This document shows, in pieces, positions 2,613 through 44,219 of a DNA stretch of 56,856 nt. Under the pieces are notes generated by a model. It made no database searches. It worked only from the letters and a program-made list of their open reading frames with translations, and was not told the origin of the DNA. This DNA comes from Octopus sinensis (taxonomy: Eukaryota). The stretch is from contig NW_021833610.1 of assembly GCF_006345805.1 (NCBI RefSeq), forward strand, positions 1 through 56,856. The letters are read 5' to 3'. Within the stretch, counting starts at the first letter, position 1; every line of letters begins with the position of its first letter. The position numbers and the translations under genes were made by a program.

Positions 2613-2794
2613 TCGAGGTTCTGTCAAGTCCACATCAAATGGTATTTTCTCAGTTGTTAATAGAGAATTGTACTCCTTTTTAACAGTTTCTATAGCATTG
2701 TCAAGATTTTGGTATTTAGCTAAGAATTTCAATGTGACACCAACATCTTTTTGACCAGCAAAGACATTATCTTCTATTTCTTCATCTTCATCAT
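2613..2794 (-). CDS. PARP14: Post-macrodomain linker exon (182 nt, phase 1 to 0)
   Basis: ttcttctatttcag|ATGATG ... CGA|gtaagt; encodes DDEDEEIEDNVFAGQKDVGVTLKFLAKYQNLDNAIETVKKEYNSLLTTEKIPFDVDLTEPR; phase matches exon 8029-8083. Confidence 0.75.
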
Positions 2795-5700: not shown

Positions 5701-8700
5701 TATTGTAGTCTTTACGGTTAAGCGTGACATGAGGCTCTGCCCTGCTGCACTAGAATTACTGCTTTGGGTTCTGAACTCATCGTGGGTCACAGCCCTAGAG
5801 TGGACTTGGGGTTTTCATTGATGGTTAAGATATATAAATCTATAATGACCCTTCCTGAGTAAGGTTACCTTTGTGCTGTCCACTTACCCTATAAAGGTGA
5901 CAACCGACGAGGGACCAATGTCACTGCTGATGGTGTCATTGCTGTCACTTTTGTGTCCCACTTGACAATGCAGTGCATTATGTATAGACCCAGGTGTAGG
6001 ACTTGTGTGAAGAACAAGTTGAACAAAACAGGGTGAGCACACAGCCATGTTTTAGGCCATTGAAGATGTCAAAAGAGTTGGTGCAGTGAGTATTGCACAA
6101 AAACATATCCGGTTATGTTGTCGTGAAAGAGTCTTGTCAGTGGTCCTATCACCTCGCACCTGTCATCAAGGCTGGACTGGAACTACTGCTGGTACTTGGC
6201 TGATAGGAGTCTGGCCATGCTGAAGGCTGGTCTAATGAGCTCTCAGCCATTGTGGTGTTCGGGAACTACGCAGATGTTGAGCTTGGCTCTTATTAGTTTG
6301 TGGTCAGTCGAGCACTCTGTCCCATGCATTCTCCTGGTGATGAGGATGTCACTGCTATCACGCTGTTTTGAATGCAGATGTGTCCGTGATGTTTTATACT
6401 TATCAGCCAGCAGGAAGATGATGTTGGTAATCAGCAGGTTGTGCTCGGCGAATTTGCTCGGCAACTGAAGACCATTGCTATTCATTTACACAACTCCATA
6501 CTTCCATCTAACCCTTCTCCACCACTCTTTATCCTTGCCAACAACAGCATTGAAGTACCCTAGTATTATAAGCTTGTCAGTAGCAGGCATGTGATGTAGC
6601 ACAGTGTCCCAGTCAGCACAGAACTGCTCTTTGATCTCTTCTGAGCATGAGATTGTAGGGTCATACCCACTCATGACAGGGACGAAGTGTTTGTGGCTGA
6701 TAGGGAAGTAGAGTTTCATAGGCTTTTCATTTACACCTGTATGAAGGTTGGGAGACTGTTTCAGGAGACAGGACTTAATGGTTTCTCCAAATACATATAT
6801 TCTCTTCTCATGTACAGTCTTTCCTTTCCAGAAGAAAGTGTAGCTGCTGCCTGATTCTGTCAGGGACCATTCCTCAGCCTAGATTGCTGCTAGGTCGATA
6901 TTGTATCACCACAATTCTTTGGCTAAGAATGATCCTTGTAGCAATGGTTAGGTCTTTCTTTCTCCGTTTGAATTGACTGCAAATGGCTAAGTCTGTCAGC
7001 TGCGAGTAGTTGACCAAATCTGTTCAGGGAAAGCTTTCTTTAAGGCACTTTTTCTAGACCCTTATCTTACTAGGGTGTGCAGTGTGGTCCTAATAACACT
7101 GCTCAGTCACTTAGGTTGCTGTTAAATTTTCTGATGTGTAATGCAATGACAGTGACCACTGGTCTGCTGGTCTCCTATGTGCAGGCTTGTGACTAGAACT
7201 CTGAGCACTCATCTCCACCTGCTGTCTTCACCAATGGTCTATCTCACCACAGGGTATGAGGTTGACTGTTGGAAGGCTGAGAAGCACAGACACCTGTGCA
7301 TGAAATTGTTGTAAGTTTGGAAGCCATTACACAAAGATAATTGCACTCTCTCATCAAGAAAAAAATACTTGAGTCAGTGGCATGGAACATCGCTATGGTT
7401 GGAGACCGTTTCTGCAGCAGGGGATGACCAGAGGCCCATAGTGATTCATCATGCAGCATGCACCCTACAAAACCTGCTGGTACTGTCAGTCCTATGGAAT
7501 GTGATTAACCACCTCCCACAAGAGTTACTAACCCTCCCTGATATAAAGAAATTACACATATGTAAATACAAAAATATACAAATACAAAAATATAACAATA
7601 TAATAGAATATGAAATAAGAATACAAAAATATCAAAAAGAAAAATGCTAAAACTATCAAAATATAAAAGGGGTGCATAAAAATATAAATATAAATGTATA
7701 ATATAGAAATATGAAAAAGAAGTTTTGAAAATACGCAATTCAGATATACTTTCATGCACGTGCACACACACACAAACCAGACATACATATATACACATTA
7801 TTGAATGGCCATTGTCTACTCATGAGATCCTTCACCTTTTCGCAGGTTGAATTTCCCATCCTACAGGGTATCCAACAAATACCCAGCAAGCTCAGTGTAG
7901 TGGCCAGTTTAGTCACTGACCATCCGACCATGTGATACGTTGTACTGCGTTACATGTTACCAGTAGCAATTAAGTGTGACATGACATAATTTGAATATAC
8001 ATTTAAGATAAATAAAAAAAGTATTTACCTGATGATGCAGCTGAACTACCTGTTGTGTTTCCTTGGAAATATTCATCAAATTTCTGTTAGAAGTAAACAA
8101 ATAATTTATCATCACTCAATCAAAAACATAATTTCATAATTAATTTCTGTTAATTTCAATGCAATGCTTTTATTCATTGCTTCTATCATGAATGTTGTTT
8201 TAAATTTACATTTCTATTCACTGTATTATAAAATAAACTCCTACGATGGACAGGGTTTGGAATATTCTGTCGTTCGGTGAGGAATTGTTACTTAAAGAAT
8301 AAGAAAACATTATTCATGGAATTGTAATTGCTTTCGAGACTCCATGTTATGTCCAAGCATCAGCTTAAGTCTTCATTATTTTCAAAACTGATTAAAACCA
8401 AAAGAAGAACATTTCTGTTGAAACAGACTGGCTTTGAGTAAATTCCAGTGAATTACTGGTATGTCAACAGTGCTTTACTTCAATGCTATATATACTGTCC
8501 TACAGAGTATATCTGCAGATGTGTACCCAACACTGGAGAAAGAAGAAAAGGAACTGGTCCAGCCAAACAATCTTTTTCTGTCCCCAACACATATTGTATA
8601 CAGAAAGTGTATGTATGACCCTCAGTTTATACACACCCGTCTTACTATACATACAGAATATAGTTGTATACAAACAACGTACTTACATTAGTCTATATGT

Positions 8701-11700
8701 ACAAATATAGTCTATAGATGTTTACATTAGTCTGTATATACAGATGCTGTATATCAACACTAGACATTTCAAATAACAACTCTGACTATTACACACTTCT
8801 ATGCACAATGAAAAGATATGAGAGATAAACTATTATGATTTGTTTCTTTGCTTTAATTTTTGCATTATTCTATTCATCTCCTGCTTGTGTTTGTATCATG
8901 TTGAAACAAACCCATCTTTAATTTAATTTAATTTAATCCACCATCATCAAAGTTTCTCTCCTAATGCCTCATTTCCTCATTTAATTATTAACGTCAATGT
9001 AAATATATATCTCTGTTATTGTAAATATATCTCACCTCTCCTCTATCTCCATTACTTCATCAGCTGTGGAAATGTGCAAATCCCATCATTTCATCTTTTC
9101 CTTACTCATGATGTGCCCATCCGCTCATGCTCTCATTACCTACATTTCTTCTGTACTGGAACCCCTCCCAACAATCCTTCTTCTGCCCTCCCCACTTCCT
9201 TCCCTTCATAGTTGCCTCTCATCCATATCACTGCAACACTAATGTCGTACTTTCTATACTTTGCACCAAAATGCAGAACCTATCAGTCCGTTAATTGATT
9301 AACTAATTAGTTATTTTCATATGTTCATTACTGTATTAACAATGCTTGTATAGCCCTCACTTCAGGCAGATGCAGCAAGTATAAGATGAATGAATAATGG
9401 CAGATAAAATGCATAGACAATTGATATGGCATGCCTGGTGGGAAACGTTTGCTGAATCCTTCCTCCCAGATGCTGAATGCCATTCTCCTTCTCCCTCTTA
9501 CCCCCTGCCCCAACCTCCTGAAGTTCCCTACAATTGGCTTTGTCAATGTAGACACATTGAAAGCTAGGTCTGTTGAGATGTTCTAACAGAGGTGTTTCGA
9601 TGTGTGCTGCCTTCAAGAAGTAAGGTGGAGAGGAGCTTCGTCCATATACCTCACAGGCAAAATACATATCTATATAATCTTCTGGGAAAGCAACAGCGAT
9701 GGGGTAGGCGGAGTAGTCATACTTCTAGCTAGGAAATGGGTGGGTAATGTAGCTGAGGTAGTCAGAGTGTGTGTTTGGGTACTTGAGCTCAGAGTAGTTT
9801 TGTAGAGTTGTACGGCAACAGTTATTTCTGCCTATGCCATTCAGATTGGTCTGCCAAATGAACAGAAGGATTGCTTTTATGATATTCTTTGGCAGATCAT
9901 CTCAAAAACTTTGAATGATCGGATATTTAGAGATGTCCTAATTGAAACTTAATATGAACCAGGAAGAGATAGAGATATGTAAAATAGAGGACAGCTAGAA
10001 GTTCTTACGAGACAACTGGAAATGAAAGATCCGGACGCTTAACAATTGTAAGGAAGTTCAGGAGGGTGGAGTAGGGTGTAAGATGGAGAAGGAGAATGAC
10101 ATGCAGCATCTGGGAGGAAGGATTCGGCAAGCATTTCCCATCAGGCATGCCATATCAGTTGTCTATGCATTTTCAGTGAAGCATTTAATGAAAAAGAGGG
10201 GAGTTACAGACGTGTAACACAGAAGATACAGGGAAGTTCCCATGAATCAATTTACTGAGATCTGCAGACCAAGTTTTGTGGGTGGTGTTAAATCTGAATC
10301 AGACCTATGGTAGCATGGTGTTGGAACAGTGTAGTAGACAGGGCCATTAGAGTGAAGAAAGAGGCCTGGAAATGTGATGGTAGTAGAGAAATATATGAGC
10401 AGGGAAACTAGGAGACAGGTATACTCAGCAGGAAGTAGTGAGTTTGTCAGTTCTTTCTATTGCGTGAGGACTTGAGGCTTGAGGTGTTTTGTATGTGAGG
10501 AAAAACCGTGATGTTGTAGGAGAGAATTATATTTGGAACAAGGGCAGTAAATGATCAGTTCTATTTCTTTTCTTTATTGTGGAATATTGGTTTTTGGTAA
10601 ATTCCAAGAATATCAACATCAAACAACAAATAAATCAACCAACCTTTACTATTTCTGTGTCTTGAGGATAAACCATGAAGTAAACATCTTTGATCTGGCT
10701 TGAATTTTGGTTTGAGTAGTTTTTCACTGCTTCAGACATTGTTCTGGGTAGATTTTCAATGGGGTACTTCAATGTTCCAGCTCCTAATATAGGAAATGCA
10801 AGGCTTTTTGCTCCCATTCTCTCAGCAGTTTCCAGACAAGTCGTTATTATTTGAGTCAAGTTTGCCAGAATCTAAAAAAAATAATTGTTTAGTAATTGAT
10901 AATGAACATTTTATGGAACTATTTCCAAATTCTTCTTACAGGGAGAAATCATTAAGTTGTAATAAATATATTCTTTGATTAAGAAATTTCCCACATATTC
11001 CGCCGATATGAGCCTCGAAAGGAGAGTAAAAGGACTCGGGGGCAGTTTCTGAAGGACCCGTACGGTTTTACTAAGAAGCTGTTCGCTGAACCGAAGAGTG
11101 GTAATTTATCGTGCACTAAAGAAGAATTGGATGCTCATATTAAGGAAACCTACAGTGATCCGCACCGTAACCAGCCGCTGCCACCTCTACATGGGCTAAA
11201 TCATCTCTCAGGACCTGATATTGAATTCCAGATTGGGGACATCAGGGACAGAGAGGTGAATGACTTCGTAAGAAAGACTAGAGCAAAGAGTGCCCCAGGA
11301 GGTGATGGCTTCTCATATAAAGTCTCACAAGTACTGCAATCGTCTGCGAAAGAAGCTCTTTGTCCTATTCCGACAACTGTGGCATGAGGAGACTATAGTA
11401 GAGGATTGATGTAAGGCAGAAGGTATATACCTGCCGAAAGAGGCCAATGCAAAGACCACAAAACAGTTTAGGCCGATATCCTTATTGAATGTGGAAGGCA
11501 AGACCTTTATGGGAATTCTGTCGAGGAGAACAGTGACATATTTACAGAGTAACGGATATGATGATGAATCTGTTCAAAAGGCTGGAATCCCTGGGATCCC
11601 TGGATGCATTGAACACTGTTTTTCGATTTGGAAAGCAATCCAGGACGCCAAACAGAACAAGAAAAGTCTGAACGTAGTATGGCTCGATCTAGCTAACGCG

Positions 11701-14700
11701 TATGGTTCAGTGCCACACAAATTACTAATAACAGCCATGGACCACGTCCACATTCCTGATAAAGTGATCAAAATAATGAGGATGTAGTATGACAGTTTCG
11801 AAATGAGGTTTACAACTGGAAATTTTACAACAGATTGCCACCAATTGGAGGTTGGCATTGCTGCTGGCTGTACAATATCTGTCACGTGGTTTATCTTAGT
11901 CATGGAGTTGATTTTGAAAGGTGTAGATTTTTCGGAACAAATCGCCCATGTACAATTGCCTAAGAAAGCCTTCATGGATGGCGTGACACTTCTAGCTACA
12001 GATAAACAAATCATGCAGAATGCCCTCTTGAGATTAGATGAACTTGTAAGGTGATCAAGGATGCGATTTAGAGCAAAAAAGTCGCGTAATCTGACATTTG
12101 TTAAGGGAGTGCAGAAAGAATTTAAGTTTCGAATATCTGAAGCAAGCATTCCAACAGTCAAGGAAGAGCCCGTCAAGAGCTTGGGACGAGTATACGCTGG
12201 AACATTGTCAGACAGAAGTCGTGGGATTGAAATTATGAAACAGGCCGAGGCTGGGTTATCAGCGATTGATAATTTGAAGTTACCAGGTAAATATAAAATT
12301 TGGTGCTTGCAGTTCGGCTTGTACCCGCAACTTGCGTGGCCACTTTTAAAATATGAGGTAGCATTGTCACGAGTTGAAATTGTTGAACAAAAATGTAATG
12401 TGTTCATTAGAAAGTGGCTAGGCCTACCTCATATGTTGAACAGTTCAGCTCTTTATCTTAAAAGAGGTTCGTTGCAGCTACCAATAGCATCAATAGTCGA
12501 AATATATAAGCTGGGGAAGATACGGACGGTCATAATGCTGAGAGGATTGAAGGATATGGAAATCAGGCGTAACCCACCAGAGGTGAAAACAGCCAGGAAG
12601 TGGAAAGCAGAGGCAGAAACTGACGACATCTTTTCTTCTCTTATACCCAGAGATATGGTGGGAGCAATACAGAACCATCGGAAAGGATTTGGTTTTGGCG
12701 CAGATCAGTTCAGACTGTTTGCAAGCATGATGCGGAGTGAACGCAGAACTGTTGTTAGCAACAGCGTCAAAACAAGAGAAGCAGAGAGAAGAGAGCTTCA
12801 TTTGATCCGATGTTTTCATCAAGGTCAAATGACGAGATGGGAAGAACATGTTGTTGAGAGGAAGGTAAGTTGGGATGAGATGTGGAAGTGGACAACATCT
12901 CAGCTGAGTTTTCTGTTTCATTCATCTTATGATGCTTTGCCATCAACTACGAATCTAGTAAGATGGAACGTCTCAGAGAATGACATCTGCAAATGTGGAA
13001 AGGTCGGTACACTAAAGACGCAGGCTGGAAAGCGGAACATTTTCCAATCGAAGTCGGTTGTAGAGGGTTTATTGGATACAGCGTGAGGTGACTTGCTATC
13101 ACTAAGCCTTACTCATTGTAAAGTCAATGCCACCATGACTGATATCCAATCTACAGTGGAGAAGGCTAGCCACTGGATTTGGTTTAAAAAGAGACGATGA
13201 GCGATGGCTAGAAGGATATTAAGTTTAACTTTATAACCAGCTGATCTAGCAATCGGTGTGCATTGATGCCGTCGAGAGGTAGGCCCCGAAACAGCGTGCA
13301 TTCTCTCCTGATGACCCCATACACTTGCTGGCTTCCGATATACGGAGCTTTTGACTGGTAGCACTTGCATGTGCAAGTTGTTTGCAAGACATATTTAGTT
13401 GTTGCAAACTGAAATGGTATATGATTTACAGATTAGAATAACATTTAAACAACATCAAGTGATTACTAGATTAATAGACGACGTGATCATTGGATTAACA
13501 TAGATCATGTGACAGAAGGATCAACATAGATCATGTGATAGAAGGAAGCCTGTCTGAATGAACATATGGATGCCATGAATAGAAAGAGAAATGTTGTAAG
13601 ATTAGGTGGATACACAGTGTAATTGAAGTAGGCTCTTGTAATTAATGGAAACAACAACAGGTAATAAGAGAGATTAATGATTCTTTACAAGAGGGAAATC
13701 TGAGTGAGAACACATTGTAAAATGCAGCAATAGAGCCCACAAGGTAGGACAACACAGAGAACCGCCTGGGATGCAGTGTTTGGGATACAACATCCTCTAT
13801 ACTGCACACAAGAGACTGTATTTTAATGTAATAGTTTGTTCAAGGAATATCTACAATACAATGTATATCAATCAATTTCGAACTGGATGTTAGCAAGCAT
13901 TAGGAACAATTAGAATGGTTTGTGAGGACAAAACTGTCTCATGGAATATGCTCCTAACATTGGCTATTTGATTCGTAATCAGTTGCCTATCGTCCATCAC
14001 CATGTGGAGGAAAAGGTCAGTTTTCCTCAATGGTGGCAGTTGCCTATCTTTCCAGTGGCCATTCCGAGAATTCATGATCTGGAAACTATAAGGAATGCTA
14101 CAAGTCCAGACTGTCACACTGTAGCCCATACTGTACATCAGTGGACACCAAAGTACATGCTTCTGTCTTGAAGCAGACGGAAGTGTTGTATGACTGGAAA
14201 AACACATCTGTGGATTGTGCATAGTTTTATGGACAATTCCGTTCATGCCACAGGGATGCTGGATCAATGATAACCTAGGGTTGTACAACAACTCTTTCAA
14301 TAAATCAATATAATATGATTGATACTTACTAAATGTGAGGAGTTTACACCCCAGGGAGGTAATACCAGATGAAATACTTTCTCACATTTGAGGTTATATC
14401 CTTTAGTGATGGCTATTTCAGATGTAGAAATACCTTTAGGATATTTCTGGTTACATTCAACTTGTATCTGTGGACCAGCAGCATTGAGAATAAATTTGGA
14501 GATAGAACCATCATTAAGCTGGAGGTGTTTATTGGTGCTGTTAATGATGACATCAACCTACAAAAGAATTTAATGGTAAACAACTAAGGAACATTCCATG
14601 GAGAGAAGAGAGATACATTGTTGCAGTTGATATTGTTGTTAAGAAAGGCTCTACAGAATGGCTGTAGTAAGTTTGAGGTTGTTAAAGTTAGCAAAAGATA

Positions 14701-15657
14701 TACTCAAGATATCAGATGTGAAGGAAATAAAATGTTTGAGTTTGATTGAGAAAATGTTTTAATTAACTGTAATGATTCCTCATTTGGAAATGAAATAACA
14801 ATTAAATAAATAAGTTACATGAATCTATTTACTCACAGATGCATTAGAAATTGAATCAATCATTAGGTTTATTTTGATACCAGGATTCTTTGTCAGGGCC
14901 ACATTAGTTCTGGGTATCACAGAAGCTGCTTTCTGTTGTGGATGAAGAGGGGATGGGTTTGATAATGAGGTCCCTGAAAAGAAACAAGTATTAATTAACG
15001 TGTGTGTGTGTGTATATATATATATATCTTATTATAAAAGGTAGATTTTATCTGCCTCCCTTTGTCTCTTATAGAAATCTACAATATAGGATTTCTTCAA
15101 TTACAATTTACCTAGCATTTTTAAGAGTAGAATACATCGGGTCGTGCCAGGTCCAGTTTTTCAAATTTCAACCCCATTTAAGCAAAATTTCGAGAAAACT
15201 CACATTGTGGTGTGTAAGTGAAGTGCTTTTCTTAGTGTGGGCTACAGCACACACACACGCACACACACACAAACGGAGCAAACTGCTTCACTGATGCTAT
15301 CACCCTAATTTCTCCTCCTTTCTCTTTGCAAGTGTGCAACGATTAAAGTGAAAGTATTTATATAAAACGAGAGAAGTGTACCTTAAACCACTACTCAAAA
15401 AAAAAACAACACAGCAAACAGAAACAAATAAATACATAACGATTTACTCCTCACACAATTTCTTCAATTAGAGTTTACCTATGATTTTTCAAAGTACTTC
15501 CATTCGGTCATGGCATACAAAATTTCTTTCAATTTCACCTCCATTTCAGAAAAAATTCAAGAAAACTAAATATTTTACCATTTCACTCTTTCACTCTGCA
15601 TTCCCACTTCCTCTTTACACACATAGACACGCAAATATATAAATAAAATTGTAAGCT

Positions 15658-15693
<36 letters not shown>

Positions 15694-18600: not shown

Positions 18601-21600
18601 GGCACAAGCACCTACACGCACATATACACACACGGCAGTAACTTCCGCCTGCCGAATTCAATCACAAAGCTTCGGTCAGCTCGGGGCTATAGCAGAAGAC
18701 ACCTACCCAGAGTGCCACGCAGTGGGACTGAACCCGAAACCATATAGCTAGGAAGCAAGCTCCCTAACCACACAGCCATGCCCGCGATTATATAGATATG
18801 GGTGTATATGGTTCTGTATGTGTGGTTCGCCCTGAAAGTCCCTGAAACGATGTATCCTCAAGAAAAAACGAATTTGATATTCAAAATCTGCATCCCAATG
18901 AATGGTCATCCATAAATAATAATATAAAAATATAATTTGCAACGAGAACTCAACTGCAAATGTCTTTCTCTCTATTTGTTACCATGAATCTCTCTCTATT
19001 ATTTTTCTCTCTGCCCCTCTCTCTCTCTCTCTCCCTATATATATATATACACACACACACACACATGTATTACCTCTCACGCATTGCTTTCATACTGTTT
19101 AAAACAATGTCTTCTAAAGTTTACTTTCGTTGTATCACAGCTTCTATGCACAAACCCTGTTTTTTCATTGCTATTCTGACCTCGTCTGTAGAATTCATAT
19201 TTTTTACATCCAAATCATTTTTGAAGACTGCAGAATGAATGATATAATCAGATGGAGCAATGTCTGACGAATATGGTGGGTGGGGCATCGTTTCCCATTC
19301 AAACTGCTCCAGCCTTTGGAATGTCATTCTTGCTGTATGTGGCCAAACATTATCCTGATGGAAGAACACCTTTCATCTTCAAACCAAAGATGGTCGTCGT
19401 TCTTCTAGTGCTGACTTAAACTGCTCAAGCTGCTCACTGTAGATCTCCTTTGTTATTGTTTGGTTTGGGTTTAAAAGTTCAAAGTGGACTTAACCTTTCA
19501 TATCTCACCAAACTGATAACAACACCTTATATGGATGAAGACCTTCTTTCTCCTGGGGTATCGGTCTTTCTCCTTTCCCTACACACTTCAGTACTTGACA
19601 TTCTTATAGAGAACCCATTTCTTGTCACCAGTCGCCATTCAGTCCAAAAAAGATTCATTCATGAGATGTGACAGCAAAGAAGAGCACACCTTAACTCTCT
19701 GTGCATGATTAGACTCAGAAAGTTAGTGAGGAAATCATTGACACCATTTGCTGTTTGCTGACTTTGTCTGGTGGCATGCAGGTGTCGATGAATGGTTGAA
19801 TGACCAAATACAAGCTTCTCTGTTAGTTCCTTAACAGTATGATGAGATTTTGTTCCACCAGGCTTTGCAGGACATCCTCATAGAGCTCTACAGATCTTCC
19901 AGAATGAGGGTTGTCTTCTAGGCTGTAGTTTCCAACACAGAATTTGTGGAACCACCATTGACACTGGCTTATACTTATTGTCCAATCCTCATATACTGTA
20001 TTAATATTCCTCACACTTTCCATTGTCTTTATGCCGAATATGCTCCTTTGTAACTTCCATTGTAGCTTTGAAAAAATGACTGTTAAAATTGAACTACACT
20101 CTTCAAAATTTGAATTAAGAATAATTCAAAGGTAAAATTACTACCTGCTTTTATAGCAAGTTGATGCAGGTCGTATTTTTTCCCATCCCCCTCCAACTTT
20201 CAGTTCATGCAATGGAAAAAATCACATTATTTATGGAAAAGAAATGTGTCTGCATGGATGATGGCTCAATTGCATTTAATGATGCTGCAAAGAGAGAGAC
20301 TTGGAGATACCACTATGAAAGGTTGTCAAATGAAGAGAATGAATGGGAGAATGAGAGTCTGCCAACAGAGAGACCAACTATCTAAATTTACAGTACCTTG
20401 GTAGATAAAGCAATTAAGGGTATGAAAACAGGGAAAGCCCGGACCCATCAGGAAACACTGCAGAGATGCTTAAAACATCTGGCAGTGTCGGCTATAGCCT
20501 AGTCACCCATATAGTCAATCAGGTGATACATGAAAGAGTCGTACCCAATGACTGGTGTAGCAGCATAATAGTCAACTGCTACAAAGATAAAGGTGACACT
20601 TTAGATACAAATAATTACAAGGGTATCACATTGTTGGATCAGGTAATGAAAGTCACAGAGAGGGTTGTAGCCCAACTAATTAGGGAGAGAGTTAGTTTAG
20701 ACAAGATACAGTTTGGGTTTGTGCCAGGGAAAAGCACCACTGATGCTATATTTCTGGTAAGACTGCTGCTGGAGAAATACCTAGCCAAAAATAAACCTAT
20801 GTACCTGACTTTCGTTGACATGGAGAAAGCCTTTGACAGGGTCCCCTGATCACTTATCTGGTGGTCAATGCGGAAACTGGGGATAGATGAATGGTTAGTG
20901 AAGGCTGTACAAGCCATTTGCAGGGATACTGTCAGTAAGGTGAGGGTTGTCAACAAGTATAGTGAAGAATTCTGAGTAGGGGTCCACCAAGGACCAAGTC
21001 CCTAACTCCATTTTATTCATCATAGTCCTCCAGACAATAACAGAGGAATTCAAGATAGGATGTTCCTGGGAGATACTCTATGCTGATGACCTTGCTCTTA
21101 TAGCTGAGTTACTATCAGAACTAGAGAAGTTTCAGGTGTAGAAGTAATGTCTAGAATCAAAGGGTCTTAGAGAGAATTTCGCAAAAAGCAAGGTCTTAAT
21201 AAGTAGGAAGGCAGACAAATCACAAATCCATTCAGGTAGATGTCCTGCTTGATCTGTAGAAAAGGCATCGGTAGAAATTCCATAAGATGTACCCAGTGCA
21301 AGCTATGGACACACAAGAGGTGCAGCAATATCAAAGAAGGCTAACTGGGAAGATAGTTTTTGTGTGTGCCAAATGCAGAGGGGCGATAAACACTGGAAAC
21401 ACATGCCAGGTGGAGAAACTAGAAGTAGTTCATAGCTTCTGTTACCTAGGTGACCAAGCCAGCATTGGGGGTGGATGCACTGAGAGCAGAACTTCTTGAA
21501 TGAGAATACCCCAGGCAAAGTGCAGAGAGCTCCTACCTCTGCTGGTAACAAAGGTAGACTGTATGACACATGTGTGAGAACAGCTATGCTACATGGCAGT

Positions 21601-24600
21601 GAAACATAGGCTGTGACAGTTGAGGATATGCATAAGGTCACAAGGAATGAAACCAGTATGCTCCACTGGATGTGTAATGTCAGTGTGGATACACAACAGA
21701 GTTTAAGAACCCTGAGAAAAAAGTTGGACATAAGAATCATCAGATGTGGTGTGCAAGAGAGACGACTGCACTGGTATGGTCATGTGGTGCAAATGGATGA
21801 GGATAGCTGTGTGAAAAAGTGTCACACCCTAGCAGTGGAGGGTACTTGTAGAAGAGGTAGACCCAGGAAGACATGGGATGAGGTGGTGAAGCATGACCAT
21901 AAAATGTTGGGCCTCACAGAGGTGATGACAAGCAACAGAAACCTTTGGAGATATGCTGTACTTGAGAAGACCTGGCAAGCCAAGTGAGACGATAACCATG
22001 ACCTATGCCAGTGTAACATAACCAGCCCAATTAAGAGTACCCATCAATCCTTGGCCAATAAACTGCACTTGAGGAGACCTGTTGAGTCAAGTGAAATCAT
22101 TGTTATAGAGGATGCCAATACTGCCTGATTGTTCCCATGCTGGTGGCATGTAAAAAGCACCATTCGAGTGAGGTTGTTGCCAGTGTTGCCTGATTGTTCC
22201 CATGCTGGTGGCATGTAAAAAGCACCATTCGAGTGAGGTTGTTGCCAGTGTTGCCTGATTGTTCCCATGCTGGTGGCATGTAAAAAGCACCATTTGAGCT
22301 TGGTTGTTGCCAGTGCCACATGACTGGCCCCCATGCCAGTGGTACATAAAAAGCATCCACTACAATCTCGGAGTGGCTGGTATTAGGAAGGGCATCCAGC
22401 TTCAGAAACCTTGCCAGATCAGGTTGGAGCCTGGTGCAGACTTCTGGTTTGCCAGTCCTCAGTGGAACCTTCCAACCCATGCCAGCATGGAAATGAGACA
22501 TTAAACAATGATGATGGTGATGATGATGAAGCTGATATTCCACCCATCTCTGCTATTGATGCTCAAACACAGAGTAGGGTTTGCTGACCCCTGTTACTTT
22601 GTTGAACACTTGACCATATCAGATTTTATATTTTGGAGATATCTACACTCCAACAGGGGGTTGAGTTCCACTCAGTTACATTGATGTTCTTGGAAAAGAC
22701 ACAGAACAAGAAGCAGAGTAAAGGGGGAGGAGGCGGACAGAGATTATTGGTGTGGAATTGTGAAATGTGTCTTGATTGTGGCAGCTTGGAAGAGGAGGAG
22801 GAAGGGGAGGAGAAAAGAGTGAAAGGAAGACAGACAGCACTGATTTCAAATCTGCTGAATCAGAACTGACTCGGGGTTAAATAAGAACAGTCAAACTGCA
22901 AAGAAGACCTTCAGTGTTACCAATTCTTGTAGAGTTGGTTTTGAATCCAATAACAACCAACAAGCAAAACATTCTTAGCTTCAAATGTTACAATGGAATA
23001 TTTCAGAAGCAAGAATTTGGTGATGGGAAATGGTATAATGAAAGGATAAAGCACAAGATATAATGAACAGCCTTAAAGGTAGCATGAAGAAAGGTACCCA
23101 GGACATGCTGTGAAGTGGTTGGCATTAGGAATGGCATCCAGCCATAGAAACCATGCCAAAGCAGACACTGGGGTTTAATAAACCCTTCTGGCTCATTGGA
23201 GCCAGTCAAAATGTTGCACCCATGAAAGTATGGAACAAGGGCAGTAAATTATTATGAGGGTCATTTCTATTTTCTTTTCTTTATTGCGGAATATTGGTTT
23301 TTGGTAAATTCCAAGAATATCAACATAAAACAACAAACAACAAATACATCAACCAACCTTTGCTATTTCTCTGTCTTGAGGATAAACCGTAAAGTAAACG
23401 TCTTTGATCTGGCTTGGATTTAGATTTGAGTAGTTTTTCACGGCTTCATACATAGTTCTGGGTAGATTTTCAATGGGGTACTTCAATGTTCCAGCTCCTA
23501 ATATAGGAAATGCAATACTTTTCACTCCCATTCTCTCAGTATTTTTCAGACAAATGGTTATTATTTGAGTCAAGTTTGCCAGAATCTAAAAAAAATAATT
23601 GTTTAGTAATTGATAATGAATATTTTATTAGAGGAAGGAATTGTTAAGTTGTAATTAATATATTCTTTGATTAACAGATTCCACACAGAATTTGTTGTTC
23701 TGAACAGAAATGTTTTACACATTTGAATAACATTAAACAACTTCTAGTGATTATTGGATTAACAGATCATGTGGTCATTGGATTAACATGGATTAACATG
23801 TGACAGAAGGATCAACACAGATCATGTGATAGCAGGAAGTCTGGTCTGAGTGAAGATATGGATGCCGTGAATGGAAAAAGAAATGTTCCAAGATTTGGTG
23901 GTTGCACAGTGTAATTCAGGTGGAATTTTGTAATTAACAAAAAAATAATAGGGAAGAGGAGAGATTAATTATTATTTACAAGAGGGAAATCTGGGTGAGA
24001 ACATACTGCAAGAAGCAACAAAACCACCCACAAGGCAGGGCGCCACAGGCACAAAAGACTCTACACTGCACACAAGAGACTATGGTTGAGTCGAAATGTT
24101 CAGGGAATATCTACAATAGAGTCTACATCAATTTCAAACAACCAGAATCCATGCTTTGGAAATTGTACAGAATACCACAACACCAGACTGTAGCCCATAC
24201 TGTAGCCCATACTGTACGTCACTGGACATCAAAATACATGCTTCTGTCTTGAAGCAGACGGAAGTGTTGTATGACTGGAAAAACACATCTGTGGATTGTG
24301 CATAGTTTTATGGACAATTCCGTACATGCCACAGGGATGCTGGATCAATGATAACCTAGGGTTGTACAACAACTCTTTCAGTAAATCGATATAATATGAT
24401 TGATACTTACTGAATCAGATGAATTTTCATCCCAGGGAGGTAATACCAGGTGAAATACTTTCTTACATTTGAGGTTATATCCTTTAGTGATGGCTAATTC
24501 AGATGTAGAAATACCTTGAGGATATTTCTGGTTACATTCAACTTGTATCTCTGGACCAGCAGCATTGAGAATAGATTTGGAGATAGCACCAATGTTAAGC

Positions 24601-27600
24601 TGGAGGCTTTTATTGGTGCTGTTAATGATGACATCAACCTACAAAAGTAATTAATGGTAAACAACTAAGGAACATTCCGTAGAGAGAAAAGAGATACATT
24701 GTTGCAGTTGATATTGTTGTTAAGTAAGGCTCTACAGAATGGCTGTAGTAAGTTTGCGGTTGTTAAAGTTAGCAAAAGATTTACTCAAGATATCAGATGT
24801 GAAGGAAATAAAATGTTTGAGTTAGATTGAGAAAAGGTTTTAATTAACTGGAAATGATTCCTCATTTGCAAATGAAATAACAATTAAATATAAATATGTT
24901 ACGTGAATCTATTTACTCACAGATGCATTAGAAATTGAACCAATCATTAGTTGTATTTTGATGCCAGCATTTTCTCCGGATGCCACATTAGTTCTGGGTG
25001 TCATAGGGGCTGCTTTCTGTTGTGGACCAAGAAGGGAAGCGTTGAATGATGTGGTTCCTGAAAATAAACAATTAAACATTTTTCTCTCTCTCTTAAAAGA
25101 ACTACTTTATTCCATATAAATAGTAATGATATTCGTTTCTGAAAATAGGATTTAGCAAGAGAATACATGCTAACTTGTAGTCACCCCCCCCCCACACACC
25201 TTTTATATAGCGACAAGGCTATATAACGTTATTTCCATCTATTTCTTCTACCACATGGACTAAAAATACATTGAAGAACATACTTGAAACTTTCAAAGTC
25301 TGAAAACAGTGAAACTGGTTAGTAAAATGTGATCTTCCACCTCTTATGAAACGTTTTTGCTTAAAACATTTATTAAAACAGGCTTCAGATGGTGTAGATT
25401 CCAGTAAGTTGGGAATTTGGTGTGAAAAAAATGTTTTTGAGAGAATGAAGAGAGGAGTTTCAGAAAATTCACATAAACTCAAATTCGTTTCCTCATAACT
25501 TTTGGGAAAATGGTTATTTTTAAATGAAAATTTCCACAAATACCTTTAAGAGTGTGTATATCACGATAATAAAAGAATTTAATATGAAAATAAAAATTGC
25601 AGACATAAATACTGATACATGTCAGATATTTGTTTTGAGACCTTTTTTTATTTTTTACCTCAAATTCCAGTAGAATTGGAATTTATACCATCTGAAGCAT
25701 ATTCATAAAAAATTTCATTAAAAAATATGCTTTTCTTTAAATTTTAAGGAAAGGAATTCATTGCAACACACATGTATAGGCATGGTGCAGGTAATGTTCA
25801 GGCTAGTTGCTATATATCATTGCACATGTGTGACCAGAAGTCCATAATAAACATGTAGTCTTTAAAATTTTAGTGAAGGATATATATATATATATATTTT
25901 TTTTTTCTAGTTTCAGCTCAGAGCTGCGGTCATGCTGATGCACCGCCGTTTTGTGCTACACTGTTATTACGACGAACCTCGTCTAATATGTGGCACTTGG
26001 TGAAGAATGGAGTTTGATATAGCTACTCTCATTTGCACCTCTTGCCGTGAGGTAGGCTCATCTGGGACTCTTGACAGGAAGATGTCCAGCTTTGATTTAA
26101 AAACTGCTACATCTACTTTGTGCAAGTTCCTCAGACTCTTTGGGAGAATATTAAAAAGCTGTGGGCTCTTGAAACCCAGGCTGTTGCAGAAGCTGGTCCT
26201 GAAGCGTGATGACATTGCTGGGATCTTTGGCACTATGCAGTGTCATCCCGTTCTAGCATTGGTGTAGCTTACAATGCCAAAATTTGGTACCATTCCTTCC
26301 AGGATCTTCCAGACATATATTACTGCATACCTGTCCCATCTTCTCTCCAGGGAGTACAGTCTTAGCTGTTTCAACCTTTCCCAGTAGCTGAGCTGTTGCA
26401 AAGAGACGATCTTCTTTGTGAATCTTCTCTGGATTGCTTCAAATTCCGCTGTTAATTTTACACTGGTGGGTGACCATAGCTGTGAGCAGTAATCCAGGCA
26501 GCTGAGGGCGAATGTCCGCCAGAGGACCATCATGGTTTCTTTATCTATGATTCTGAATGTTCTTAGGATCCACCCAGCCAGTTGTCTGCACTTTGTCGCC
26601 ATCCTGGTAATGTGCACTTGGAAAGAGGTATCATCATTCATGTCGATACCCAGGTCCCTCACAGACTTAGGCTCTGGGATTGAAATTCCCTGTGGACCAG
26701 TGTATCCTGTAAGTTTAATATTCAGTTTTGGATGCTGGTAGCGCAGGGCCTGGAAATTTTCAGCATTAAACTGCATATTATTATCCTCAGCCCATCTGTA
26801 GATTGAGTCCAACTCCTGCTGCAGGTGTGCAACATCGCTGGGGTTCTGTATTTTCTGCAAGACTTTCGTATCGTCTGCATAGCCGGGCATTTGAGGGCAT
26901 ATCTGAGAGGGCCACTATAAAAAGCAGTGGTCCCAAGACAGTGCCCTGTGGAACACCGCTCACTATTTGTGTGTTCATAGAGGTGGCTCCATTAACCACT
27001 ACTGCCTGACTCCTATCTTTCAGGAAGTCATGTAACCACACTCCTAGTTTTCCAGCTATGCCGAGGTGATGTAGTTTGTGGCATATCATACCATGATCCA
27101 ACTTGTCAAAAGCTTTTGCAAAATCAAGGTAGATTACGTCTACATTTGATTTGTTGAGTAACTGCCTCAACACCCAGTCATAATGCTGTAAGAGCTGGGT
27201 CAGGCAGCTCCTACCTGGTCGAAAACCATGCTGGGAATCACTCAGCAAGTTATTTTCCTCAAGGAATGCGATTAGTTTCTTTCTGACTATCCTTTCCATG
27301 ACTTTGCTGATGTGTGAAGTCAGAGAGATAGGCCTATAGTTTTTGGCATCTGCTCTACTTCCCCCTTTATGTATTGGGCATATTATTCCCTCCTTCAGCT
27401 TGCTTGGCAGTGTGCCATTCGCAAGAAAGCTCTGGAAAAGAATCTTGAGGGATTTTGCCAGGGCATGCTTACACGCTTTGAGGAGGATGGCTGGGAAACC
27501 ATCTGGACCAGCAGCTGAGTTTGTGTCCACTTCATCTATGGCTAGTAGGACATCTTTTTCGCTAATGTCAATACATTCTATTGTAACCGCCTCGCTGGTT

Positions 27601-27900
27601 ATAGGTGAGGTGGCAAAGAAGTCCCCTGGTTCATTCACTTGTCTGTGTTCCAACGGGGTGGTAAAGACCCTTTTGAACTGGTCATTCAGCATCTCACTGA
27701 TCTTAGTTGGACTGTCTGTGAGGGAGCCATCCTTTTGGAGGAGGGGTCCTATCTTGTAGTGCAGTGAGACTGTTTCTTTCGCGTAATGAAAGAAGGCCTT
27801 TGGGTTTGATTTAATGTTTTTTATAACCCAGGCCTCTTTGTCTGCTTTCTTCTTCACATAGGATTGTTGCAGCCTTTTTTCGATGTCCATCAGTGTTGTT

Positions 27901-27937
<37 letters not shown>

Positions 27938-41833: not shown

Positions 41834-42371
41834 AAACATCACTGGAATTTTGGTTTTAAATTTTGGCACAAGGCCAGCAATTTCAGGAGAGTGGCTAAGT
41901 CAATTACATCAACCCCAGTGCTCAGCTGGTACTTATTTTATTGACCATAAACATCACTGAAATTTTGGTTTCAAATTTTAGCACAAGACCAGTAATTTCA
42001 GGAGAGAGGCTAAGTCAATTACATCAACCCCAGTGCTCAGCTGGTATTTATTTTATTGACCATAAACATCACTGGAATCTTGATTTCAAATTTTGGCACA
42101 AGGCCAGCAATTTCAGGAGAGTGGCTAAGTCAATTACATCAACCCCACTGCTCAACTGGTACTTATTTTATTGACCATAAACATCACTGAAATTTTGGTT
42201 TCAAATTTTGGCACAAGGCCAGCAATTTCAGGAGAGTGGCTAAGTCAATTACATCCACTCCAGTGCTCAGCTGGTATTTATTTTATTGACCATAAACATC
42301 ACTGGAATCTTGATTTCAAATTTTAGGACAAGGCCAGCAATTGCAGGAGAGTGGCTAAATAGATTACATCG
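41834..42371. repeat. 115-bp tandem array, about 4.7 copies, SINE-derived
   Basis: aaacatcact starts at 41834, 41949, 42064, 42179 and 42294. Confidence 0.95.
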
Positions 42372-42619
42372 ATCACATTGCAAATGCAAGAGGATGAAAG
42401 ACATAGTCATCCCTGTCAGAATTTGAACATTGAGTGTGAAGATGGATGAAATACCGCTAGCCATTTCATCCGACATGCCCGCCCATCACCATTATCACTG
42501 AGATAATAAGAAACATCATCATCATTTAGCGTCTGTTGTCCCTGGTGATATGGGTTGGACAGCTTGACCAGGGCTGGTAATGTGGGAGACTGCAACAAAT
42601 GCCAGTCTGGTTTGGAGTG

Positions 42620-43790: not shown

Positions 43791-44219
43791 ATTTGTGGAA
43801 GGGCATCAGGCTGTAAAAATCCTGCCAAAACAGACACAGAAGTGCCTGGCTAGCTCCTGTCAAACCGTCCCAACCATTCTAGCATGGAACATGGATGTCA
43901 AACAATGATGATGATTTTATTAGTTTGATCAATATTTCAACTGTTTGCTTCTCTTTGTCAAGTTCTAATGAAAACATGATGAATAGAAATTTAAAAATTG
44001 TAGAAATTCAAATTCAAAACTTGGAACGAGGAGATCCTGCATTCCCAGTTTGACAAAATGATGTCATCAGTCTTCAATTTTCAATTGTATAACTGGCTAA
44101 AAGAAAGAAAAACAACAAGAGAAAAAAGAAAAAGGAGAAGAATATATAGTCAGTTTTGTGTGAATATTATGAAATTCCTCTGTCATTTTATTCATCCCTT
44201 CATGGTGTAGATGTTAATA

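What the first reader, a model, noticed from the sequence alone, without database searches (positions are those of the whole stretch)
8029..25057. Macro-PARP that gained an ADP-ribose reader by tandem duplication of a four-exon cassette
Two colinear cassettes (A 25057-17782, B 14973-8029) each have exons of 137, 228, 228 and 55 nt. Both keep every splice site and an open frame, and flanking intron sequence is shared, so the event was a genomic duplication. Each adds one complete 216-aa macrodomain module entered and exited in phase 1. Vertebrate PARP14 has three anciently diverged macrodomains (established). Here the three-macro layout appears to have arisen from a recent lineage-specific duplication (inference), a candidate case of modular expansion in an invertebrate ADP-ribosylation immune gene.
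Basis: partly seen in the sequence, partly recalled or inferred. Interest (0 to 1): 0.82.

Follow-up and report, generated by a model that had tools for sequence, protein, structure and literature searches.

The report
Duplicated macrodomain cassette in octopus PARP14-like gene
An Octopus vulgaris PARP14-like gene really carries two tandem four-exon copies of its second ADP-ribose-binding (macro2-type) domain, but the duplication is old and family-wide, and its similar introns come from gene conversion, not from youth.

Summary
On the minus strand there are two colinear cassettes of 137/228/228/55 nt. All have AG..GT splice sites and an open frame in phase 1-1, and each encodes one Pfam Macro domain. 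The window is Octopus vulgaris. A second assembly has the same intact structure, so this is not an artefact.

Both modules are macro2-type: human PARP14 macro2 scores about 100 bits and macro3 43-52 bits. The layout is therefore macro1-macro2-macro2', not macro1-2-3, which supports that part of the inference.

"Recent" is not supported.
- The O. sinensis orthologous locus carries both A and B.
- At least six other Octopus PARP14-like genes have the tandem pair, and one has 3.5 modules.
- Argonauta has two cassettes with the same exon plan.
- A does not group with B in module trees.

Unconverted segments (exon 1, exon 4, intron 3) hold 10-22% fixed A/B differences that predate the O. vulgaris/O. 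sinensis split. Intron 1, exon 2 and the start of intron 2 are homogenised, and a post-speciation A-to-B conversion in O. sinensis is the likeliest source of its A-like exon 2.

RefSeq isoforms in two paralogues splice across cassettes into hybrid single macrodomains. This is a new variant of a known kind, of moderate interest.

The parts
40128..41663 (-). Large upstream coding exon. Its last ~45 codons begin macro1, and it ends in phase 1. The 5' boundary is inferred from an AG and from homologue alignment.
   Evidence: The frame is open. tblastn of P0002 gives 97% identity over 528 aa. Pfam finds no family in the N-terminal part.
34822..35070 (-). Macro1 middle exon: 249 nt, phase 1-1.
   Evidence: AG/GT splice sites and frame. 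Pfam Macro E 4.4e-21. 100% identity to P0002 residues 644-727.
30611..30790 (-). Macro1 last exon: 180 nt, phase 1-1.
   Evidence: The whole macro1 is closest to human PARP14 macro1 (3Q6Z, 116 bits).
24921..25057 (-). Cassette A exon 1: 137 nt, encoding the linker and first strand.
   Evidence: AG/GT. The O. sinensis orthologue is 96.4-97% identical. Identity to B1 is 80.3%. All 23 informative quartet sites support A/B orthology across species.
24411..24638 (-). Cassette A exon 2: 228 nt, the N-terminal half of the macrodomain.
   Evidence: Identity to B2 is 91.7%.
23358..23585 (-). Cassette A exon 3: 228 nt, the C-terminal half of the macrodomain including the GAG loop.
   Evidence: Identity to B3 is 91.2%, and dN/dS A-B is 0.39. 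This exon is absent from the O. sinensis orthologue because of a clean 1.9-kb deletion.
17782..17836 (-). Cassette A exon 4: 55 nt, the tail, exiting in phase 1.
   Evidence: Identity to B4 is 78.2%. The A4-to-B1 junction is present in O. sinensis RefSeq model P0043.
14837..14973 (-). Cassette B exon 1: 137 nt.
   Evidence: The O. sinensis orthologue is 97-98% identical.
14330..14557 (-). Cassette B exon 2: 228 nt.
   Evidence: RefSeq model P0002 uses its first 43 codons. The O. sinensis B2 is closer to A2 than to this exon, which indicates conversion.
10644..10871 (-). Cassette B exon 3: 228 nt.
   Evidence: 99.1% identical to the O. sinensis orthologue.
8029..8083 (-). Cassette B exon 4: 55 nt.
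   Evidence: 100% identical to the O. sinensis orthologue.
2613..2795 (-). Next downstream coding exon: 183 nt, phase 1-1, an acidic linker (DDEDEEIEDN...). The rest of the gene, including the PARP catalytic domain, lies beyond window position 1.
   Evidence: 100% identity to P0002 residues 1026-1086. It follows B4 in O. sinensis model P0043.
24191..24920 (-). Homogenised (gene-converted) tract, copy A: intron 1, exon 2 and the first ~220 nt of intron 2.
   Evidence: Intron 1 differs from B by 5.0% and the start of intron 2 by 3.7%, against 20% in exon 1. There is no orthology signal in intron 1.
14110..14836 (-). Homogenised tract, copy B.
   Evidence: Same as for copy A.
14974..17781 (-). 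Inter-cassette intron (A4 to B1), 2808 nt. It shares no sequence with the introns flanking the pair, apart from ~17 nt upstream of exon 1 and ~25 nt downstream of exon 4. It carries a Helitron-type Pif1 fragment (16304-16852, + strand) and local tandem repeats.
19124..22515 (.). Transposable-element insertions that inflate intron 3 of cassette A to 5521 nt, against 2560 nt in B. They comprise a mariner-like element (Mos1 HTH, 19826-20125) and an interspersed repeat (20240-22515); three of its four other copies in the window lie where RT ORFs were found.
   Evidence: Repeat copies. Pfam.

Best explanation
The window holds the middle of an Octopus vulgaris PARP14-like mono-ADP-ribosyltransferase gene, on the minus strand. 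It encodes a macro1 of the hydrolase-type lineage followed by two tandem macro2-type macrodomains, A and B. Each is built from the same four-exon, phase 1-1 cassette.

The pair descends from a tandem genomic duplication of the macro2 cassette. That event happened well before the O. vulgaris/O. sinensis split, before this tandem gene family radiated, and probably in or before the octopod ancestor.

Since then the cassettes have evolved as a mosaic. Exon 1, exon 4 and most intron sequence kept their old divergence, and introns were reshaped by transposon insertions. A ~0.7-kb tract (intron 1, exon 2 and the start of intron 2) is repeatedly homogenised by gene conversion between cassettes and between paralogues.

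In O. vulgaris both cassettes are intact, and A4 would splice to B1 in frame. The splice itself is modelled only in the O. sinensis orthologue (P0043). The inferred protein therefore has macro1 plus two ADP-ribose reader modules ahead of the ART domain.

The following steps are inferred, not shown:
- The extra reader raises avidity or broadens recognition of mono-ADP-ribosylated targets.
- Because all exon phases match, skipping or cross-cassette splicing can yield one-reader or hybrid-reader isoforms.
For: - **Structure:** exon lengths, splice sites and frame; one Macro domain per cassette.
- **Identity of the locus:** P0002 is 99% identical, O. vulgaris PARP14-like, with Macro plus PARP domains. 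The second assembly is colinear, with all eight exons intact.
- **Macro2 type:** 3Q71 scores 102.7 and 99.1 bits, against macro3 (4ABK) at 52.5 and 42.9. Macro1 matches 3Q6Z at 116 bits.
- **Age:**
  - The O. sinensis orthologous locus L003 is 95-97.8% identical and has A1, A2, A4 and B1-B4.
  - Quartet sites supporting A/B orthology versus concerted change are 23:0 in exon 1, 12:0 in exon 4 and 41:0 in the last 405 nt of intron 3.
  - Paralogues P0003, P0004, P0005, P0008, P0013 and P0014 each have two modules, and P0259 has 3.5.
  - First- and second-position modules of the orthologue pair P0004/P0005 are each monophyletic at 100%.
  - A groups with first-position modules (94% in exon 1), and B with P0008 second position (74%).
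  - Argonauta has two cassettes of ~121/228/231/~57 nt.
- **Conversion:**
  - Intron 1 differs by 2.2-5.8% in all 15 pairs, whether orthologous or paralogous.
  - Intron 1 has only 3 orthology sites against 2 concerted sites.
  - O. sinensis B2 is 4.0% from its own A2 but 9.6% from O. vulgaris B2.
  - In exon 2 alone, A pairs with B (77% bootstrap).
- **Use of both cassettes:** O. sinensis model P0043 reads A4-B1-B2-B3-B4-next exon. dN/dS in exon 3 is 0.39, and there are no indels in 648 nt.
- **Isoforms:** P0018 equals P0013 minus exactly 210 aa, joining first-position exon 2 to second-position exon 3. P0007 joins first-position exon 1 to second-position exon 2.
- **Domain functions:** MD1 as hydrolase and MD2/MD3 as readers come from PMC13224862 and PMC10221186.
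Against: - No transcript data for this gene could be examined.
- The only RefSeq model at this locus (P0002) joins A3 to the first 43 codons of B2 and skips A4, B1, B3 and B4. Production of the full two-reader protein in O. vulgaris is therefore not shown.
- ADP-ribose binding by A or B is untested. The only structural model was of low confidence (pLDDT 55).
- A single old duplication followed by concerted evolution cannot be separated from recurrent duplication in Argonauta and in gastropods, where module pairs cluster by species.
- The O. sinensis orthologue has lost A3 and shows frameshifts. The two-reader state is therefore dispensable there, unless these are assembly errors.
Confidence: 0.75

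Rival explanations
1. One reading: a recent duplication specific to this gene or lineage created the third macrodomain, and intron similarity reflects its youth.
For: Intron 1 is 95% identical between A and B, and the exon 1-intron 2 block is 91% identical. In domain-core trees A and B pair weakly (58%).
Against: - The O. sinensis orthologue has both cassettes.
- 23, 12 and 41 fixed A/B differences predate speciation in exon 1, exon 4 and intron 3, with none supporting within-species grouping.
- The pair is present in at least six paralogues and in Argonauta.
- Intron 1 is equally similar to cassettes of a different gene in another species.
Confidence: 0.04
2. Recurrent independent duplications: the macro2 cassette, being phase-symmetric, was duplicated separately in different paralogues or lineages (Octopus, Argonauta, caenogastropods) rather than once. 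Similarity within a species reflects separate young events.
For: - Module pairs cluster by species at 94-100% bootstrap in Argonauta, Littorina, Babylonia and Batillaria.
- The Argonauta cassettes are 97.4-98.6% identical over 2.9 kb including introns.
- Copy number varies from 1 to 3.5 among Octopus paralogues.
- L001 has an extra exon-1 copy.
Against: - Within Octopus, first- and second-position modules of different genes share position-specific features. The GNTTGSSAASS tail occurs in B and in the second-position modules of P0003, P0004, P0005 and P0008.
- A groups with first-position modules at 94% in exon 1.
- Gene conversion is directly seen and by itself produces clustering by species.
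Confidence: 0.2
3. The cassettes are mainly alternatives rather than additive. Transcripts usually contain one macro2 module (A, B or an A/B hybrid made by cross-cassette splicing), so the protein is normally a two-macro PARP.
For: - All internal junctions are phase 0, so an exon k of A to exon k+1 of B splice is in frame.
- RefSeq isoforms P0018 and P0007 are exactly such hybrids in two O. sinensis paralogues.
- P0002 crosses from A3 into B2.
Against: - Two-module isoforms are modelled for the same genes (P0013, P0004) and for P0003, P0005, P0008 and P0014.
- P0043 contains the A4-B1 junction.
- These are predicted models whose read support could not be checked.
Confidence: 0.15
4. One cassette is a decaying, unused copy in this gene, and only one macro2 module is functional.
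For: - In the O. sinensis orthologue, cassette A has lost exon 3 and has two 1-nt deletions.
- dN/dS is about 1 in exon 1 and 0.77 in exon 2 between A and B.
- P0002 omits most of B.
Against: - In O. vulgaris both cassettes keep 216 open codons, all eight splice-site pairs and no indels, in two assemblies.
- Exon 3 has dN/dS 0.39.
- Conserved macro2 motifs (DVIINS, AAGP.IQ, FPILGAG) are kept in both cassettes.
Confidence: 0.1
5. Assembly artefact, or two haplotypes laid in tandem.
For: None beyond the general risk in repeat-rich cephalopod assemblies.
Against: - A and B differ by 12% in exons and by more than 20% in most intron sequence, with different transposon insertions.
- The same structure is in a second O. 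vulgaris assembly and in O. sinensis.
Confidence: 0.01

Closest known systems
Vertebrate PARP14 (RRM/KH - MD1-MD2-MD3 - WWE - ART)
   Same: - A macro-PARP with an MD1-type first macrodomain, a macro2-type reader module and a C-terminal PARP catalytic domain.
- Paralogues carry PARP14-type RRMs.
- The best PDB matches are PARP14 MD1 and MD2.
   Different: - The third macrodomain is a copy of macro2, not a macro3-type domain.
- Pfam detects no WWE domain in the octopus proteins.
- No RRM exon was found for this gene within the window or L002.
PARP9 (MD1-MD2) and PARP15 (MD2-MD3): partial duplicates of PARP14
   Same: They show that macro-PARP macrodomain number changes by duplication or truncation (PMC10221186). 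PARP9 MD2 is the second-best solved relative of A and B (59-69 bits).
   Different: Those arose by partial gene duplication that gave new genes. Here a domain cassette was duplicated inside the gene.
PARP14-like proteins of other molluscs with paired macro2-type modules (Argonauta hians GAB1599116.1; Littorina saxatilis, Babylonia areolata, Batillaria attramentaria)
   Same: - Two adjacent macro2-type modules cluster by species (94-100% bootstrap).
- Argonauta has the same four-exon cassette plan in tandem.
   Different: The Argonauta copies are 97-98.6% identical including introns, whereas the Octopus copies are a mosaic of 2-25% divergence. Some of these proteins keep a macro3-type domain as well (Littorina d3, Pecten d4).
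Concerted evolution with introns more alike than exons, as in the primate red/green opsin genes (recalled from memory, not tested here)
   Same: Introns are homogenised by gene conversion while adjacent exons stay more different.
   Different: Selection maintaining the exon differences is not demonstrated here. An edge effect and patchy conversion from other paralogues are equally possible.
Tandem alternative exon arrays (for example arthropod Dscam1): a 'works like' comparison only
   Same: Tandem homologous exons with matching phases can be combined by splicing. Hybrid isoforms are annotated in two paralogues.
   Different: There are only two to four cassettes. Both are included in several models, and neither a mutually exclusive mechanism nor regulated choice is shown.

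Membership tests
PARP14-like macro-PARP | C-terminal PARP/ART catalytic domain in the same gene | tested here: met
   P0002, the RefSeq product of this locus at 99% identity, has PF00644 with E 1.8e-17. Its exons map to L002 72569-76019, outside the window.
PARP14-like macro-PARP | [quoted passage not shown] | tested here: met
   Three Macro domains are encoded in the window.
PARP14-like macro-PARP | First macrodomain of the MD1 (MacroD/hydrolase-type) lineage | tested here: met
   The best PDB hit is PARP14 MD1 (3Q6Z, 116 bits), then PARP9 MD1. The macro1 clade has 80-93% bootstrap. The NAAN...GGV motif is present. Hydrolase activity was not tested.
PARP14-like macro-PARP | Second macrodomain of the MD2 lineage | tested here: met
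   A scores 102.7 bits and B 99.1 bits against 3Q71.
PARP14-like macro-PARP | Third macrodomain of the MD3 lineage (canonical three-macro architecture, PMC10221186) | tested here: not met
   B scores 42.9 bits against MD3 (4ABK) and 99.1 against MD2. Octopod second and third macros form one clade, separate from the MD3 clade.
PARP14-like macro-PARP | WWE domain and N-terminal RRM/KH domains | tested here: inconclusive
   No WWE hit at E<=0.001 in P0002, P0003, P0005, P0008 or P0013. RRM_PARP14 is found in paralogues P0003, P0005 and P0008 but not in P0002. No RRM exon was found in the window or L002.
Tandem exon-cassette (intragenic domain) duplication | Colinear exon sets of equal length and phase, with intact splice sites and homologous flanking intron DNA | tested here: met
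   The orthologue L003 has both cassettes. Quartet sites are 23:0, 12:0 and 41:0 for cross-species A/A and B/B grouping. Paralogues share the pair. A and B are not sisters in the whole-module tree.
Concerted evolution by gene conversion | A tract where paralogous copies are as similar as orthologues, flanked by segments with a clear orthology signal, with lineage-specific replacement of one copy by the other | tested here: met
   Intron 1 differs by 2.2-5.8% in all pairs, whereas exon 1 differs by 3% between orthologues and 16-23% between paralogues. O. sinensis B2 resembles A2.
ADP-ribose reader macrodomain | Binds (mono-)ADP-ribose and lacks hydrolase activity | not testable with these tools
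   Only sequence conservation with PARP14 MD2 was seen: DV[IV][IV]NS, AGP.[IL]Q and FP.[IL]G[AT]G are aligned. The AlphaFold model had pLDDT 55 and was not used.

The most novel reading that the evidence does not exclude
The macro2 cassette array of octopod PARP14-like genes acts as a diversity generator for ADP-ribose readers. Three processes would contribute:
- copy-number change (1 to about 4 cassettes per gene);
- inter-cassette and inter-paralogue gene conversion;
- in-frame cross-cassette splicing that assembles hybrid macrodomains.

Selection would keep the coding exons different while the introns are homogenised. In all six paralogous pairs, exons 1 and 2 are 2-10 times more diverged than intron 1. 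This would be an invertebrate antiviral arms-race device.
Probability: 0.15. Interest if true: 0.75.

Novelty: new variant of a known kind. Interest (0 to 1): 0.42.

Why it matters
PARP14 is a central antiviral and immune ADP-ribosyltransferase. Its three macrodomains have been taken as the ancestral macro-PARP layout (PMC10221186).

In octopods the third macrodomain is a duplicated macro2 rather than a macro3. In several mollusc lineages, macro2-type modules also occur as pairs that cluster by species. Domain counts alone therefore mislead about homology.

The locus is also a clean worked example of how gene conversion can make an old intragenic duplication look young. If hybrid splicing is real, the cassette could be a tractable system for asking what extra or chimeric ADP-ribose readers do.

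Tried and rejected
- **Assembly artefact or alleles:** rejected. A second assembly and a sister species have the same structure.
- **B as a disguised macro3:** rejected by PDB scores and trees.
- **Conserved RNA element in intron 1:** there is no Rfam hit in 7500-25600. The intron 1 fold has z = -1.44, which is unremarkable. Between orthologues, intron 1 evolves at the neutral rate, so constraint does not explain its similarity.
- **Simple positive selection as the reason exons are more diverged than introns:**
  - dN/dS A-B is 0.65 overall, about 1.0 in exon 1, 0.77 in exon 2 and 0.39 in exon 3.
  - True orthologues show ordinary exon divergence of 1-3.6%, except the converted B2.
  - The pattern is therefore attributed mainly to a conversion tract plus an edge effect. 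A residual excess in exon 2 remains unexplained.
- **Structure prediction of module A from an 11-sequence alignment:** it gave pLDDT 55, so no fold search was run.
- **Genomic DNA of most paralogues:** not retrievable. Gene ranges exceed 100 kb for P0003, P0005, P0008, P0010 and P0013, and P0004 is not on record.
- **The search for homologous proteins:** it returned mainly proteins close to the query in length, so module counts in squids, cuttlefish and Nautilus could not be obtained. No decapodiform appeared among the 20 top-ranked representatives that were named.
- **Literature:** searches found no description of this cassette duplication in cephalopods.

Full report
**1. The observation**

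A self-comparison of the window shows four colinear direct-repeat blocks between 8.0-15.0 kb and 17.8-25.1 kb, at 76-91% identity.
- A1 25057-24921, A2 24638-24411, A3 23585-23358, A4 17836-17782.
- B1 14973-14837, B2 14557-14330, B3 10871-10644, B4 8083-8029.

All are flanked by AG and GT. Each set sums to 648 nt and is open only in the frame that starts with two bases completing a codon, so each is phase 1 in and phase 1 out.

Each cassette is a complete Pfam Macro domain, with E 1.4e-21 and 5.1e-21. Joined to the upstream exons (41663-40128, 35070-34822, 30790-30611, all phase 1), they give a continuous 1086-aa frame. No other cassette fragments occur in the window.

**2. What the locus is**

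The translated exon chain is 99% identical to an Octopus vulgaris RefSeq protein, P0002 ("protein mono-ADP-ribosyltransferase PARP14-like", 1402 aa), which has Macro and PARP catalytic domains.

The public chromosome segment that encodes it is L002 (GCA_951406725.2, OX597814.1, 215.81-215.89 Mb). It is colinear with the window at 98.6-99.8% identity with small indels, so the window comes from a different assembly or haplotype of the same species. All eight cassette exons are intact there, with AG/GT, and differ by 11 substitutions in total. That excludes an assembly artefact or collapsed alleles.

The PARP catalytic exons lie outside the window (L002 72569-76019; window position 1 corresponds to L002 61715). 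The next exon after B4 inside the window is 2795-2613.

The RefSeq model itself is odd. Its first ~116 residues come from a reverse-transcriptase fragment. It joins A3 to the first 43 codons of B2 and then to exon 2795-2613, skipping A4, B1, B3 and B4.

**3. Which macrodomains these are**

- A profile of octopus modules, and A and B singly, hit human PARP14 macrodomain 2 best (3Q71: 113, 102.7 and 99.1 bits).
- PARP9 macrodomain 2 comes next (59-78 bits).
- PARP14 macro1 scores 51-60 bits and macro3 (4ABK) 43-56 bits.
- The first macrodomain of the window gene hits PARP14 macro1 best (3Q6Z, 116 bits).

In neighbour-joining trees, macro1-type domains form a clade (80-93% bootstrap) and vertebrate macro3 domains form another. 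All octopus second and third macros form a single clade at 100%, or 99% with Argonauta included.

The octopus layout is therefore macro1-macro2-macro2'. The literature treats macro1-2-3 as the ancestral macro-PARP layout, and assigns hydrolysis to MD1 and reading to MD2/MD3 (PMC10221186; PMC13224862).

**4. How old the duplication is**

Four lines of evidence say it is not recent and not specific to this gene.

*(a) The orthologue has both cassettes.* The true O. sinensis orthologous locus, L003, is colinear with the window at 95-97.8%. It carries A1, A2, A4, B1, B2, B3, B4 and the next exon. In a quartet of O. vulgaris A, O. sinensis A, O. vulgaris B and O. sinensis B, the informative sites supporting (A,A | B,B) against (Ov,Ov | Os,Os) are:

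| Segment | A,A / B,B sites | Within-species sites |
|---|---|---|
| Exon 1 | 23 | 0 |
| Exon 4 | 12 | 0 |
| Last 405 nt of intron 3 | 41 | 0 |

That is 10-22% of fixed A/B difference already present at speciation. Lineage-specific change since then is about 1-3%.

*(b) Paralogues share the pair.* The tandem pair of macro2-type modules is present in at least six other PARP14-like genes: O. sinensis P0003, P0004, P0008, P0013 and P0014, and O. vulgaris P0005. One O. sinensis protein (XP_029633869.1, P0259) has macro1 plus 3.5 such modules. In the clear orthologue pair P0004/P0005, first-position and second-position modules are each monophyletic at 100%.

*(c) A and B are not sisters.* In the whole-module tree, A joins the first-position modules of P0004/P0005 (58% overall, 94% for exon 1). 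B joins the second-position module of P0008 (74%). B also shares the tail GNTTGSSAASS with the second-position modules of four other genes.

*(d) Argonauta has the same plan.* Argonauta hians, a distant octopod, has two tandem cassettes with exons of about 121, 228, 231 and 57 nt. Its copies are 97.4-98.6% identical over 2.9 kb.

Macro2-type module pairs that cluster by species also occur in Littorina, Babylonia and Batillaria. Multiples occur in Haliotis, Saccostrea, a starfish and a hemichordate.

**5. Why the introns look young**

Divergence along the cassette is a mosaic. A-versus-B identities are:

| Segment | A vs B identity |
|---|---|
| Exon 1 | 80.3% |
| Intron 1 | 95.0% |
| Exon 2 | 91.7% |
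| First 220 nt of intron 2 | 96.3% |
| Exon 3 | 91.2% (flanks about 78%) |
| Exon 4 and upstream intron | 77-78% |

I compared six sequences: O. vulgaris A and B, O. sinensis A and B, and both modules of a different O. sinensis gene, L001. Exon 1 shows clean orthology, at 2.9-3.6% against 16-23%. Intron 1 differs by only 2.2-5.8% in every one of the 15 pairs, whether orthologous or paralogous.

Orthologous intron 1 evolves at the ordinary neutral rate of the locus, so constraint is not the cause. The tract has been homogenised by gene conversion among cassettes and paralogues.

A conversion after speciation is the likeliest reading of exon 2. O. sinensis B2 is 4.0% from its own A2 and 5.3% from O. 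vulgaris A2, but 9.6% from its orthologue O. vulgaris B2. In addition, 14 exon-2 sites are unique to O. vulgaris B. A patch copied into O. vulgaris B2 from another paralogue would give the same pattern.

**6. A residual puzzle**

In all six paralogous comparisons, exons 1 and 2 are significantly more diverged than the adjoining introns. Fisher p values are 1e-3 to 6e-13 for exon 1 and 0.049 to 2e-5 for exon 2.

For exon 1, an edge effect is a sufficient explanation. Homology starts only 17 nt upstream of it, and divergence falls from its 5' half (21-29%) to its 3' half (9-17%).

For exon 2, which is flanked by homogenised intron on both sides, A/B differences cluster at nt 31-65 and nt 209-227. 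Two readings remain possible:
- selection keeping module-specific residues;
- patchy conversion from other paralogues.

dN/dS values are not decisive: 0.65 overall, 0.99 in exon 1, 0.77 in exon 2 and 0.39 in exon 3, with single pairs reaching 5.45 on 18 non-synonymous against 1 synonymous change. I leave this unexplained.

**7. Are both cassettes used?**

In favour:
- Both are open, free of indels and correctly spliceable in two O. vulgaris assemblies.
- Exon 3 is under purifying selection.
- Macro2 motifs are kept in both cassettes.
- The O. sinensis RefSeq model P0043 reads A4(part)-B1-B2-B3-B4-next exon, and so includes the A4-B1 junction.

Against, or uncertain:
- P0002 skips most of B.
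- The O. sinensis orthologue has a clean 1.9-kb deletion removing A3. It also has single-base deletions in A2 and in the next exon, in short homopolymer runs that could be long-read errors.
- No RNA data could be examined.

All internal junctions are phase 0 and the cassette is phase 1-1, so skipping and cross-cassette splicing are in frame. RefSeq isoforms of two O. sinensis paralogues are exactly such hybrids:
- P0018 equals P0013 minus 210 residues, joining first-position exon 2 to second-position exon 3.
- P0007 joins first-position exon 1 to second-position exon 2.

**8. Mechanism and confidence**

Shown:
- a tandem duplicated, phase-symmetric macro2 cassette;
- its age relative to speciation and to the family radiation;
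- gene conversion;
- transposon-driven differences in intron size (Pif1/Helitron, mariner-like and RT-associated repeat fragments).

Inferred:
- The protein carries a macro1 hydrolase-type domain plus two ADP-ribose readers in front of a mono-ART domain.
- The added reader changes avidity or specificity for MARylated targets.
- Splicing can vary reader number.

The original breakpoints cannot be reconstructed. Homology ends 17 nt upstream of exon 1 and 25 nt downstream of exon 4. The 2.8-kb inter-cassette intron shares nothing with the outer introns.

**9. Novelty**

Frequent tandem duplication of PARP14-like genes, and variable macrodomain number in invertebrates, are known (PMC4245714; PMC13224862). 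Rapid evolution of macro-PARPs is also known (PMC4038475).

I found no description of the octopod macro1-macro2-macro2' architecture, of its cassette basis or of its concerted evolution. I rate it a new variant of a known kind, of moderate interest.

Noticed in passing
window 3608-4453: About 0.85 kb present in the window is absent from the other O. vulgaris assembly (L002 58109-58113). This looks like a transposable-element insertion polymorphism. Conversely, L002 has about 1 kb extra at window 43797-43799.
   Followed up: no
window 46836-47015 (minus strand) and RefSeq P0002 residues 1-116: The annotated N-terminus of the RefSeq protein for this locus derives from a reverse-transcriptase-like fragment. 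The model also skips A4, B1, B3 and B4 and truncates B2. The public gene model is probably wrong.
   Followed up: partly
window 54922-56608 versus 27925-30453: These segments are 92-95% identical. The right end of the window is the tail of the upstream tandem paralogue (P0009, a gene with macro1 only), so the window sits inside a tandem array of PARP14-like genes.
   Followed up: partly
window 41834-42381: A tandem repeat of about 115 nt (4-5 copies, 85-93% identical) sits just upstream of the large exon. A related copy lies in the A4-to-B1 intron of the O. sinensis orthologue (L003 10830-11472).
   Followed up: no
L003 5290-5611 and 26071-26252 (O. sinensis orthologue): A clean 1.9-kb deletion removes exon A3. 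A2 has two 1-nt deletions and the exon after B4 has one, all in short homopolymer runs. The orthologue is either decaying or carries long-read assembly errors.
   Followed up: partly
L001 about 24265-24394 (O. sinensis P0014 locus): An extra exon-1-like copy lies about 95 nt upstream of the first module's exon 1. This is a further local duplication inside the family.
   Followed up: no
P0259 (O. sinensis XP_029633869.1): This paralogue has macro1 plus 3.5 macro2-type modules, and one unit lacks exon 3. Cassette copy number therefore varies among family members.
   Followed up: partly
L005 5397-7474 / 18593-20649 and 9567-10396 / 20642-21471 (Argonauta hians): Two tandem macro2 cassettes are 97.4-98.6% identical including introns, 13 kb apart, next to a separate gene model holding the PARP domain. 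This reflects either a very recent duplication or strong conversion.
   Followed up: partly
window 26790-27899 (-), 49532-51882 (-), 53516-54331 (-), 16304-16852 (+), 19826-20125 (-): Introns and flanks are packed with transposon remnants: RVT_1 reverse transcriptases, an endonuclease domain, a Pif1/Helitron-like fragment and a Mos1-type HTH. These account for most of the intron length differences between the cassettes.
   Followed up: partly
window 24411-24638 versus 14330-14557 (exon 2): A/B differences in exon 2 cluster at nt 31-65 and nt 209-227, while both flanking introns are homogenised. Possible causes are selection on those two coding stretches (their structural position was not mapped) or patchy conversion from other paralogues. 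This is unresolved.
   Followed up: partly
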